Shown here piece after piece: positions 5,119 to 6,003 of a stretch of DNA of 8,165 bases (positions are counted from its first letter, which is position 1; the number at the start of each line of letters is the position of its first letter). Source of the stretch: Octopus sinensis. Its lineage: Eukaryota. A program made the position numbers and the translations under genes. The stretch spans positions 1-8,165 of the forward strand of contig NW_021828522.1 in the NCBI RefSeq assembly GCF_006345805.1, given 5' to 3'. The notes under the pieces were generated by a model. It saw nothing but the letters and a program-made list of their open reading frames with translations, was not told where the DNA came from and made no database searches.

Positions 5119-5205
5119 CTGGTTTGCACGCACAACGGTAGGAACCTAGGAAATTGTGACATATGGCACCATAACGACAAGGATTCTTTAAACACTCGTT
5201 GATGT
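5119..5205 (-). pseudogene. Calcium-binding EGF-like exon, 3'-truncated
   Basis: Acceptor GGTTTCATTTTTCAG| at 5206/5205 with phase-1 entry. It translates (D)[28 protein letters not shown], which has the D-x-N-E-C start, the C-x-N-x-x-G-S-Y-x-C-x-C core and 5 of 6 cysteines. It is cut at 5119 by SINE sequence. Confidence 0.85.
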
Positions 5206-5289
5206 CTGAAAAATGAAACCGAAATTTTATTATTTTCAAAATTATTTGAAGCAAAGGCAGCGTATTTCAATGGAAATTGTTAATGTCAT

Positions 5290-5320
5290 ATCATCATCAT
5301 CATCATCATCAACAACAACA
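5290..5320. repeat. (ATC)7(AAC)3 microsatellite, possibly the tail of an antisense retroposon
   Basis: The repeat is read directly. The following catccgcttttgcatacttgcat resembles retroposon 3' ends from recall only. Confidence 0.7.
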
Positions 5321-5396
5321 TTCTGGCATCCGCTTTTGCATACTTGCATCCATCAGACAAGAGTCAAAATGGAGCAGAGTTTTGGAAAAGATGAAC

Positions 5397-5541
5397 GTAG
5401 GTGTGGCTGTGTGGTAAGTAGCTTGCTTACCGACCACATGGTTCAGGGTTCAGTCCCACTACATGGCACCCTGGGCAAGTGTCTTCTATTATAGCCTCGG
5501 GCCGACCAAAGCCTTGTGAGTGGATTTGGTAGACGGAAACT
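5397..5541 (+). mobile_element. tRNA-derived SINE (octopus-type), 3'-truncated, located in an intron of the EGF gene fragment
   Basis: Pol III A-box-like tggctgtgtgg (5404-5414) and B-box-like ggttcagtccc (5447-5457). The body ggcaccctgggcaagtgtcttct...cgggccgaccaaagccttgtgagtggatttggtagacggaaact matches a widespread octopus SINE from recall. Confidence 0.85.
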
Positions 5542-5545
5542 CTAC

Positions 5546-5620
5546 CGAAAGATTGAAAGTTGATCCATTCACATGCACTCACACAGAACCATTCACCAGG
5601 TGTATAGCCAATTTTTTACA
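5546..5620 (-). pseudogene. Putative middle exon of the EGF-containing gene fragment
   Basis: Acceptor GTTTTTTTAG| at 5621/5620. Adding one A to the A6 run gives [25 protein letters not shown]+G|GTAG (phase 0 in, phase 1 out). The donor is weak. An alternative GTGAGT donor exists at 5582. Confidence 0.45.
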
Positions 5621-5801
5621 CTAAAAAAACCTCAAAATTTAAAACCAATAAAATTATCGATTTGCAATTGTCCATGTTTCTCAGATAAGACCATACAGAT
5701 AAGGCCATACTGACACCAGTCTTCGTAAAAATCAGTGAAATACCTATTGAGATATTTATTTAGAAAGATAACAGGCTGAAATCGTTTTGTACCCAACTCA
5801 C

Positions 5802-6003
5802 CTGAGCAATGTTGACGAGGTTAAGATCATTCAGAGCTTCTGTAATGTTACCAACATTCATTCTGTAGTTTCCATTCTCAAAGTCCATTCTAGAACCATC
5901 AAGAGGCTTGGCATCAGTTCACGCGGATAGCCGCGCTCTTCATTGATGGACGATCCGAGTGATCCCCTGTCCAGGGTTTCGGTATTTGCTACTACTACTA
6001 CTA
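5802..6003 (-). pseudogene. Putative upstream exon of the EGF-containing gene fragment
   Basis: Acceptor CTTTTAATTTCTTTCAG| at 6004/6003 and donor CAG|GTGAGT at 5802/5801. It reads [28 protein letters not shown], then after a 1-nt shift near 5920 [39 protein letters not shown]. The protein is not recognised. Confidence 0.55.

What the first reader, a model, noticed from the sequence alone, without database searches (positions are those of the whole stretch)
5119..6003. Hidden three-exon fragment of a calcium-binding EGF gene, invisible to the ORF track
Three minus-strand exon candidates have consecutive splice signals. Adding one A in each of the first two gives compatible phases (1->0, 0->1, 1->). 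The reconstructed peptide is [121 protein letters not shown]. Phase-1 entry is the standard architecture for EGF modules. The fragment keeps its introns, so it was copied at the DNA level and is not a retrocopy. It is cut about 17 nt upstream of the first acceptor by the GC-rich satellite and inside the EGF exon by a SINE segment. The first two exons match no domain I recognise. The EGF exon call is strong; the linkage of exons is inferred.
Basis: partly seen in the sequence, partly recalled or inferred. Interest (0 to 1): 0.8.

Follow-up and report, generated by a model that had tools for sequence, protein, structure and literature searches.

The report
Lone truncated EGF exon relic
Only one of the three proposed exons is real: a broken, orphan calcium-binding EGF exon lying among transposon debris 4 kb from an octopus telomere, while "exon 1" is mostly a decayed piece of a 5.8S ribosomal RNA gene and "exon 2" has no support, so this is ordinary chromosome-end junk.

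Summary
The window is Octopus DNA: a Helitron ORF is 79-96% identical to O. vulgaris proteins. It starts with an 800-nt (CCCTAA)n telomere tract.

Exon 3 (5119-5205, minus strand) is a genuine calcium-binding EGF module. Pfam EGF_CA scores 36.6 bits (cut-off 27, E 5e-9), and the exon has a clean phase-1 acceptor. It stops after the fifth cysteine, where it abuts a SINE fragment that is itself truncated at its 3' end.

The three-exon model fails.
- Exons 1 and 2 have stop codons in all three frames unless a base is added.
- Their peptide has no Pfam match and no word-sharing relative among 5.8 billion proteins.
- Exon 1 carries a 5.8S rRNA 5' fragment at 5912-5978. Rfam gives E 6.5e-7, and 43 of 54 bases match metazoan 5.8S, against nothing comparable in controls.
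- The donor and last 6 nt of exon 2 lie inside another SINE.

No parent gene was found; the best single-repeat identity is 68-70%, to Notch-like and laminin-G/EGF proteins.

The best reading is a subtelomeric patchwork holding one unprocessed pseudo-exon and an rDNA relic. It is ordinary and of low interest.

The parts
5119..5205 (-). 3'-truncated calcium-binding EGF exon (29 codons, phase-1 entry). It covers DINEC through C5 of the module and lacks the last ~11 profile positions, including C6.
   Evidence: Pfam PF07645 EGF_CA 36.6 bits (cut-off 27), E 5.2e-9, profile positions 1-32 of 43. It is the only EGF-like Cys pattern in the six frames. 4181 EGF proteins hit it in the representative library.
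5206..5225 (-). Splice acceptor of the EGF exon (atttcggtttcatttttcag).
   Evidence: Read directly. The D codon is split G|AC, which is phase 1.
5226..5395 (-). Anonymous AT-rich intron-like DNA upstream of the EGF exon, including a (TGA/TCA)n microsatellite at 5286-5311. It probably came with the exon.
   Evidence: No copy in 81 kb of O. vulgaris DNA. No Pfam or credible Rfam match. Microsatellite from TRF.
5028..5118 (+). Octopus SINE fragment ('SINE B'), truncated at both ends. Its truncated 3' end abuts the truncated EGF exon tail-to-tail and supplies the codons EVD-stop.
   Evidence: 72-80% identical copies in L002, all ending at 5117/5118. The family consensus continues ~60 nt further (aatccgtttgtctgtccttgtttgtcc...).
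5396..5552 (+). Octopus tRNA-type SINE ('SINE A'), complete at its 5' end and truncated at its 3' end. It contains the proposed exon 2 donor (5546-5541) and the last 6 nt of 'exon 2' (5547-5552).
   Evidence: 7 copies at 76-96% identity in L001-L003. In the alignment the family continues ...ggaaact gaaagaagcccgtcg, so window 5547-5552 'gaaaga' is still SINE.
5547..5620 (-). It is anonymous DNA plus the edge of a SINE.
   Evidence: Stops in all 3 frames. No Pfam. No homologue. The weak donor GTAGAG lies inside SINE A.
5912..5978 (-). Decayed 5' fragment of a 5.8S rRNA gene (about positions 1-68 of ~155). The Rfam alignment formally spans 5852-5978.
   Evidence: RF00002 37.6 bits (gathering 42), E 6.5e-7 for the window, with high-confidence alignment over model positions 1-64. 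43/54 identical, ungapped, to human 5.8S positions 15-68. Score 32, against 13.0 +/- 1.3 (max 18) in 300 simulated windows and a maximum of 15 in 81 kb of octopus DNA.
5802..6003 (-). It consists of (TAG)5, the 5.8S fragment and ~110 nt of anonymous DNA ending in a chance CAG|GTGAGT.
Evidence: Stops in all 3 frames. No Pfam. No homologue.
6062..8117 (.). GC-rich block bounding the region: 271-nt direct repeats (6062-6332 and 7846-8117, 90% identical) around a 139/175-nt satellite.
   Evidence: TRF period 139, 7.3 copies, 96% matches. Pairwise alignment 247/273.
4..798 (+). Telomere tract (CCCTAA)n with variant units. It places the whole region in a subtelomere.
   Evidence: TRF period 6, 130.7 copies. 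(TTAGGG)n is the octopod telomere repeat (PMC6160780).

Best explanation
The region is a subtelomeric patchwork of broken, unrelated pieces in an Octopus genome, not a three-exon gene fragment.

One piece is coding-derived: the 5' two-thirds of a single calcium-binding EGF exon with the end of its upstream intron (about 5119-5395, minus strand). It is an unprocessed pseudogene fragment copied as genomic DNA from a multi-EGF gene.

Its 3' end was lost at a breakpoint (5118/5119). There it is joined tail-to-tail to a SINE copy that is itself truncated at its 3' end. That is the signature of deletion or end-joining, not of a SINE retrotransposing into the exon.

Upstream on the same strand lie, in order:
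- a second 3'-truncated SINE;
- anonymous DNA;
- a decayed 5' fragment of a 5.8S rRNA gene (an rDNA relic);
- a GC-rich satellite block.

The splice-like motifs around 'exons' 1 and 2 are chance matches. Nothing indicates that any of it is expressed or functional.

Shown: the identity of each piece and the truncations. Inferred: the mechanism (break-and-repair or segmental duplication at a chromosome end) and the lack of function.
For: EGF identity and truncation:
- Pfam EGF_CA 36.6 bits, profile positions 1-32 of 43.
- It is the only EGF-like pattern in six frames, so no neighbouring EGF exons exist in the window.

Exons 1 and 2:
- Closed in all frames.
- No Pfam match.
- No word-sharing homologue in 5.8 billion proteins.
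- No similarity within the 150 top EGF proteins.

5.8S fragment:
- Rfam RF00002 E 6.5e-7.
- 43/54 identity to metazoan 5.8S, z about 14 against simulations.
- No 18S 3' end or 28S 5' end nearby, so it is an isolated fragment.

SINEs:
- Boundaries and truncations come from alignment with copies in O. vulgaris loci.
- The exon 2 donor lies inside SINE A.

Context:
- Telomere tract at 4-798.
- Helitron fragment 79-96% identical to O. vulgaris proteins.
- The O. vulgaris genome is about 66% repeats, with 11.6% SINEs (PMC13282606).
- Octopod nucleolar organiser regions (NORs) are terminal, which makes an rDNA relic near a telomere unsurprising (PMC6160780).
- Splice-like motif pairs are common by chance here.
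Against: - No parent gene could be identified. No protein shares three 5-residue words with the EGF ORF, and the best single-repeat identity is only 68-70%. The 'copied from a multi-EGF gene' step therefore rests on domain identity and exon structure alone.
- The relic keeps every consensus residue up to C5 and a perfect acceptor. That is more intact than expected if it were as old as the flanking SINE fragment, which is 72-80% identical to other copies.
- No whole-genome or transcriptome search was possible, so copy number and expression are untested.
- The 5.8S hit is below Rfam's gathering score (37.6 against 42).
Confidence: 0.8

Rival explanations
1. One reading: a three-exon, intron-retaining fragment of a calcium-binding EGF gene, with one frameshift in each of exons 1 and 2.
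For: Splice-like motifs are present at the stated positions, including a consensus CAG|GTGAGT at 5802/5801. All three segments are on the same strand. Exon 3 is a real EGF exon with phase-1 entry.
Against: - Needs two ad hoc base insertions, because there are stops in all frames otherwise.
- No Pfam match.
- No homologue for exons 1 and 2.
- One third of exon 1 is a 5.8S rRNA gene fragment, and the 'frameshift' lies inside it.
- The exon 2 donor and last 6 nt are SINE sequence, and the donor lacks G at +5.
- Such motif pairs are common by chance.
Confidence: 0.03
2. The EGF exon is still in use. It would be the last coding exon of an unannotated subtelomeric gene whose upstream exons lie beyond the window. 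The stop codon (EVD-TAA) and an AATAAA ~90 nt downstream would be supplied by the antisense SINE.
For: An intact acceptor, no stop within the module, and all consensus residues conserved. An in-frame TAA at 5110-5108 and AATAAA within the (TAA)n run at about 5020 on the minus strand.
Against: - A module ending after C5 leaves an unpaired cysteine and cannot fold as an EGF.
- No protein in the 5.8-billion collection, which includes the O. vulgaris annotation, contains this peptide.
- Upstream on this strand there are only SINEs, an rRNA fragment and more than 2 kb of satellite.
- The AATAAA sits in a microsatellite.
Confidence: 0.05
3. The EGF exon, and perhaps the 5.8S fragment, are host fragments captured by a Helitron. 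The Helitron's Rep/Hel remnant lies on the same strand at 1733-2680.
For: A Helitron Rep/Hel fragment is in the window on the same strand. From general knowledge, Helitrons are known to capture exon-plus-intron fragments of several genes in one orientation.
Against: - Three other O. vulgaris copies of the Helitron, with 10 kb flanks, carry nothing similar to 5119-5395 or 5542-6003, at DNA or protein level.
- 2.4 kb of unrelated SINEs and other repeats separates the EGF exon from the Helitron remnant.
- No Helitron termini were identified.
- Shared strand for three items has a chance probability of about 1 in 4.
Confidence: 0.07
4. The EGF resemblance is a chance match in non-coding DNA.
For: The segment is short (29 codons) and no parent was found.
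Against: EGF_CA E 5.2e-9, above the curated cut-off. That remains about 1e-6 after allowing for six-frame scanning of 8 kb. The complete DxNEC ... CxNxxxxYxCxC consensus is present, together with a phase-1 acceptor exactly at the module boundary.
Confidence: 0.01

Closest known systems
Calcium-binding EGF modules (Pfam PF07645 EGF_CA) of Notch-type and laminin-G/EGF (Crumbs-like) proteins
   Same: The DINEC calcium-binding head, the C-x-N-x4-Y-x-C-x-C hydroxylation-type consensus and a phase-1 exon boundary. The best single-repeat matches are 68% to a Notch-architecture protein (P0031: EGF, LNR, NOD, NODP, Ank) and 70% to a laminin-G/EGF protein (P0080).
   Different: Only 5 of 6 cysteines are present: the module is cut after C5. 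It is solitary, with no neighbouring modules in the window. Identity to any known module is no higher than the generic family level, so no parent can be named.
Unprocessed (duplicated) pseudogene fragments in subtelomeric patchworks, as described for human and other chromosome ends (own knowledge, not tested here)
   Same: An intron-bearing gene piece a few kb from a telomere tract, embedded among truncated repeats, local duplications and satellite blocks.
   Different: The source locus is unknown, so the duplication itself is inferred and not shown. Other copies at other chromosome ends could not be sought.
5.8S ribosomal RNA gene (Rfam RF00002) and rDNA relics or orphons outside the array
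   Same: Positions ~1-68 are recognisable, with the metazoan GGATCACTCGG block exact and the GCGCGGC/CCGCG hairpin retained. Octopod rDNA arrays are terminal (PMC6160780).
   Different: It scores below the Rfam gathering score. The universally conserved second half is absent. There is no 18S, ITS or 28S context. It is about 20% diverged from a functional metazoan sequence, so it is not a working 5.8S gene.
Helitron gene-fragment capture
   Same: A Helitron remnant and two host-gene fragments lie on one strand within 4.3 kb.
   Different: The fragments are not found beside three other copies of the element, and they are separated from the remnant by unrelated repeats.

Membership tests
EGF_CA (PF07645) module | Profile score above Pfam's gathering threshold | tested here: met
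   36.6 bits against 27, E 5.2e-9.
EGF_CA (PF07645) module | N-terminal D/N-x-D/N-E/Q-C calcium-binding motif and C-x-D/N-x4-F/Y-x-C-x-C consensus | tested here: met
   DINEC and [12 protein letters not shown], read directly and by regex.
EGF_CA (PF07645) module | Six cysteines forming three disulphides (a complete module) | tested here: not met
   Only C1-C5 are present. Profile positions 33-43 are missing. The frame runs into SINE sequence and stops after EVD.
EGF_CA (PF07645) module | Phase 1-1 exon typical of EGF modules | tested here: inconclusive
   The 5' boundary is phase 1 with a good acceptor. The 3' boundary is deleted.
   Exons 1 and 2 have stops in all three frames without an added base.
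   No word-sharing protein for exons 1+2. No Pfam match. No similarity in the 150 best EGF proteins. A whole-genome tBLASTn was not possible.
   No RNA-seq data were available.
5.8S rRNA gene (RF00002) | Score at or above Rfam's gathering score | tested here: not met
   37.6 against 42 bits, although E is 6.5e-7 for the window.
5.8S rRNA gene (RF00002) | Full-length conserved core, including the second half that pairs with 28S | tested here: not met
   Only model positions 1-64 align with confidence. Local alignment stops at 5.8S position 68.
5.8S rRNA gene (RF00002) | Lies between ITS1/18S and ITS2/28S in an rDNA unit | tested here: not met
   No SSU or LSU hit in the window. No 18S 3' end or 28S 5' end motifs.
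Unprocessed pseudogene fragment | Retains an intron-exon boundary of the source gene and carries a disabling lesion | tested here: met
   Acceptor plus intron-like flank, and a 3' truncation with a stop.
Unprocessed pseudogene fragment | An identifiable parent gene elsewhere in the genome | tested here: inconclusive
   No close protein was found in the collections. The genome itself could not be searched.
Helitron-captured gene fragment | The fragment lies between Helitron termini and recurs in other copies of the element | tested here: not met
   Absent from three other copies with 10 kb flanks. Termini were not identified. The sample is small.

The most novel reading that the evidence does not exclude
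The isolated 5.8S fragment beside a GC-rich, repeat-bracketed satellite a few kb from the telomere could be the scar of a former terminal rDNA array, meaning a lost or relocated nucleolar organiser at this octopus chromosome end. The satellite would then derive from rDNA spacer. The unusually intact EGF exon could be a recent arrival, or still spliced into an unannotated subtelomeric transcript.
Probability: 0.1. Interest if true: 0.35.

Novelty: new member of a known kind. Interest (0 to 1): 0.12.

Why it matters
It matters mainly as a correction. An apparent hidden three-exon gene dissolves into one orphan pseudo-exon, an rRNA gene relic and transposon fragments. The lesson for the scan is that splice-like motifs plus hand-repaired frames easily assemble false gene models in repeat-rich DNA, and that non-coding RNA models should be run before coding is proposed. 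Biologically it adds a small, ordinary example of how chromosome ends collect broken pieces of genes, rDNA and mobile elements. It would become mildly interesting only if the 5.8S and satellite block proved to be the remnant of a displaced nucleolar organiser.

Tried and rejected
- Word-indexed protein searches with the reconstructed exon 1+2 peptide and with the 48-aa EGF ORF both returned nothing.
- The exhaustive HMMER search with the EGF peptide gave 4181 multi-EGF proteins. These show only generic similarity. The top hit, P0013, is merely a protein with 29 near-identical EGF repeats at 55% identity, not a parent.
It was replaced by regex scanning and ORF-wise Pfam.
- A Smith-Waterman alignment against the Rfam majority-rule consensus with harsh scoring was not significant (25, against 21.4 +/- 2.0). 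That consensus carries non-metazoan letters. The same test with a metazoan 5.8S was decisive.
- Exact look-ups of window ORFs in the contig index found nothing: the Helitron ORF and two ORFs in the GC-rich block, at 7873-8151 and 6001-6324.
- Exact-match scans of metagenome contigs for the satellite and for the 5.8S-like fragment found nothing.
- ARAGORN found no tRNA gene in the SINE heads.
- Other Rfam hits (snoRNA, miRNA, scaRNA, CRISPR repeat; E 0.4-9.5) were treated as noise.
- A possible target-site duplication around SINE A (gaaaagatgaa / gaaagattgaa) was considered and dropped as too weak.
- Helitron capture was considered and given low weight.

Full report
**Context**

The window is eukaryotic. 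It opens with about 800 nt of (CCCTAA)n with variant units (TRF: period 6, 130.7 copies). This is the C-rich strand of the (TTAGGG)n telomere repeat reported for octopods (PMC6160780).

A 244-codon ORF at 1878-2609 (minus strand) is 79-96% identical to Octopus vulgaris proteins annotated as Helitron helicase-like or PIF1, which places the window in the genus Octopus. I fetched three O. vulgaris loci carrying those genes (L001-L003, 81 kb, assembly GCA_951406725.2). I used them as a sample of octopus DNA to define repeats.

BLASTN of the window against them shows several multi-copy elements:
- a Helitron remnant at 1733-2680;
- a repeat at 4608-4945;
- a SINE fragment at 5028-5118 ('SINE B');
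- a tRNA-type SINE at 5396-5541 ('SINE A').

From 6062 to the end of the window lies a GC-rich block. It consists of two 271-nt direct repeats (6062-6332 and 7846-8117; 247/273 identical) around a 139/175-nt satellite. The finding therefore sits 4.3 kb from a telomere tract, in repeat-rich subtelomeric DNA. The O. vulgaris genome is about 66% repeats, with 11.6% SINEs (PMC13282606).

**The observation**

The quoted peptide, however, exists only after inserting one A into exon 1 and one into exon 2. As the DNA stands, exon 1 (5802-6003, 202 nt) and exon 2 (5547-5620, 74 nt) each have stop codons in all three frames.

Splice-like motifs are not enriched here.
- GTRAGT occurs 3 and 5 times on the two strands of the 5.2 kb between the telomere tract and the GC-rich block, close to the 2.5 expected.
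- Segments of 50-250 nt bounded by an acceptor-like and a donor-like motif number 13-15 per strand.
- The exon 2 'donor' GTAGAG lacks the G at +5.

**Exon 3 is real**

[29 protein letters not shown] (5119-5205, minus strand) scores 36.6 bits against Pfam EGF_CA (cut-off 27, E 5.2e-9), covering profile positions 1-32 of 43. It has the DxNEC calcium-binding head and the C-x-N-x4-Y-x-C-x-C consensus.

It is preceded by a good polypyrimidine tract and AG, exactly at the module boundary, with the Asp codon split G|AC, which is phase 1. The in-frame sequence upstream is AT-rich and not EGF-like. The piece therefore came from genomic DNA and not from a processed transcript. It is the only EGF-like cysteine pattern in the six frames of the window.

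It is incomplete. It ends after the fifth cysteine, and the frame then reads EVD-stop in SINE sequence.

**The cut**

All copies of SINE B in L002 stop matching the window at 5117/5118. The family consensus, and the other copy in this window (3346-3475), continue for about 60 nt more.

At 5118/5119, then, a SINE truncated at its 3' end meets an exon truncated at its 3' end, tail to tail. Retrotransposition into the exon would have left the SINE's 3' end intact. This junction is a deletion or end-joining breakpoint.

**Exon 1 is mostly a 5.8S rRNA gene fragment**

An Rfam scan of the whole window gives one significant hit: 5.8S rRNA (RF00002) at 5852-5978, minus strand. The score is 37.6 bits, below the gathering score of 42, with E 6.5e-7. 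The alignment is confident over model positions 1-64 and poor beyond.

A crude alignment to Rfam's majority consensus was not significant.
- Window 5965-5912 aligns without gaps to 5.8S positions 15-68, with 43/54 identities.
- The alignment score is 32.
- 300 simulated windows gave 13.0 +/- 1.3, with a maximum of 18.
- 81 kb of real octopus DNA gave a maximum of 15.

The block GGATCACTCGG is exact, and the GCGCGGC/CCGCG hairpin is kept through a change on both sides. The conserved second half of 5.8S is absent. The window holds no 18S or 28S signal. It is an isolated, roughly 20% diverged relic of the first 68 nt of a 5.8S gene.

The rest of exon 1 is a (TAG)5 microsatellite plus about 110 nt of anonymous DNA that ends in a chance CAG|GTGAGT.

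**Exon 2 has no support**

Besides having no open frame, its 3' end is SINE. In other copies SINE A continues '...ggtagacggaaact gaaagaagcccgtcg...'. In the window it reads '...ggtagacggaaact ctacc gaaaga ttgaaag...'. The proposed donor (5546-5541) and the last 6 nt of the 'exon' (5547-5552) are therefore SINE sequence. An ancestral exon-intron boundary cannot lie inside a later insertion.

**Homology tests for the linkage**

- The reconstructed exon 1+2 peptide shares no three 5-residue words with any of 5.8 billion proteins.
- It matches no Pfam family, and neither do the natural ORFs of the region.
- The 48-aa EGF ORF likewise has no close relative. The collection includes the O. vulgaris annotation, so no annotated protein carries this module at high identity.
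- An exhaustive HMMER search with the EGF peptide found 4181 proteins, all multi-EGF.
- The best single-repeat identities are 68-70%: P0031, with Notch architecture, and P0080, a laminin-G plus EGF protein. This is the generic level for the family.
- None of the top 150 proteins shows similarity to exons 1 or 2.

**Explanation**

The most likely account (confidence about 0.8) is a subtelomeric patchwork. It contains an unprocessed pseudo-exon (EGF exon plus intron end), an rDNA relic, truncated SINEs, a Helitron remnant and satellite DNA, brought together by duplication, breakage and repair at a chromosome end.

Further signs of local rearrangement are the duplicated, identically truncated SINE B pieces at 3282-3435 and 4941-5117, and a TTAGGGTTAGGG 12-mer exactly where the first of them breaks off. 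Octopod nucleolar organisers are terminal (PMC6160780), so an rDNA fragment near a telomere is not surprising.

The mechanism and the lack of function are inferred. The identities and truncations are shown.

**Rivals**

- The three-exon model (0.03) fails on frames, homology, the 5.8S identity and the SINE-borne donor.
- A live terminal exon (0.05) is unlikely. A module with five cysteines cannot fold as an EGF, no annotated protein contains it, and only repeats lie upstream. Expression, though, is untested.
- Helitron capture (0.07) is not supported by three other copies of the element, but the sample is small.
- A chance EGF resemblance (0.01) is excluded.

**What remains unexplained**

- The parent gene is unknown.
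- The relic is remarkably intact for something embedded among SINE copies that are 72-80% identical to their relatives.
- The origin of 5553-5911 is unknown.
- Whether the GC-rich block derives from rDNA spacer could not be tested, because no octopus rDNA unit or whole genome was searchable with these tools.

**Verdict**

This is an ordinary feature, a new example of a known kind, and of low interest.

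Noticed in passing
window 4-798: (CCCTAA)n telomere tract, 130 units, with many variant units (CCCTAG, CCCCAA, CCCTTAA, CCCGAA, CCCAAA) arranged in blocks. The window appears to start at a chromosome end.
   Followed up: partly
window 1733-2680 (minus); ORF 1878-2609: Helitron Rep/Hel remnant covering the stretch between the Helitron_like_N and PIF1 domains. 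It is 79-96% identical to O. vulgaris proteins and has no Pfam hit of its own.
   Followed up: partly
window 3282-3435 and 4941-5117: Two copies of the same 5'-truncated SINE B piece. They share non-SINE 5' flank (gtgtgcgtgtgttatat...tcaaggtaacaatgtcttta) and the same 14-nt internal deletion. This is a local duplication 1.7 kb apart, not two independent insertions.
   Followed up: partly
window 3474-3486: TTAGGGTTAGGG on the + strand, exactly where SINE B copy 1 departs from its family consensus. It is a short interstitial telomere-like 12-mer in the orientation opposite to the terminal tract, and could be a trace of an old break or healing event.
   Followed up: no
window 6062-6332 and 7846-8117; satellite 6340-7845: 271-nt direct repeats (90% identical) bracket a GC-rich satellite of 139-nt units, with some 175-nt units carrying a 36-nt insert. 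The long stop-free frames there (up to 166 codons) are by-products of the repeat. The 23-mer searched from the satellite unit had no exact match in metagenome contigs.
   Followed up: partly
window 5922-5937 (minus strand): Within the 5.8S fragment, the conserved hairpin is kept by a change on both sides (A-U to G-C: GCGCGGC-uau-CCGCGU). This could mean the fragment evolved for a time as a structured variant before decaying, or it could be chance.
   Followed up: no
window 4608-4945: A multi-copy octopus repeat of unknown class, with at least 6 copies at 80-95% identity in the 40-kb locus L002.
   Followed up: no
window 866-946 and 1608-1703: Two short direct repeats (78-90% identical), about 750 nt apart, lying between the telomere tract and the Helitron remnant.
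   Followed up: no
window 3035-3147 and 3690-3741: Long (AG)n (59 units, imperfect) and (AC)26 microsatellites. They explain the strong GC and AT skew seen there.
   Followed up: no
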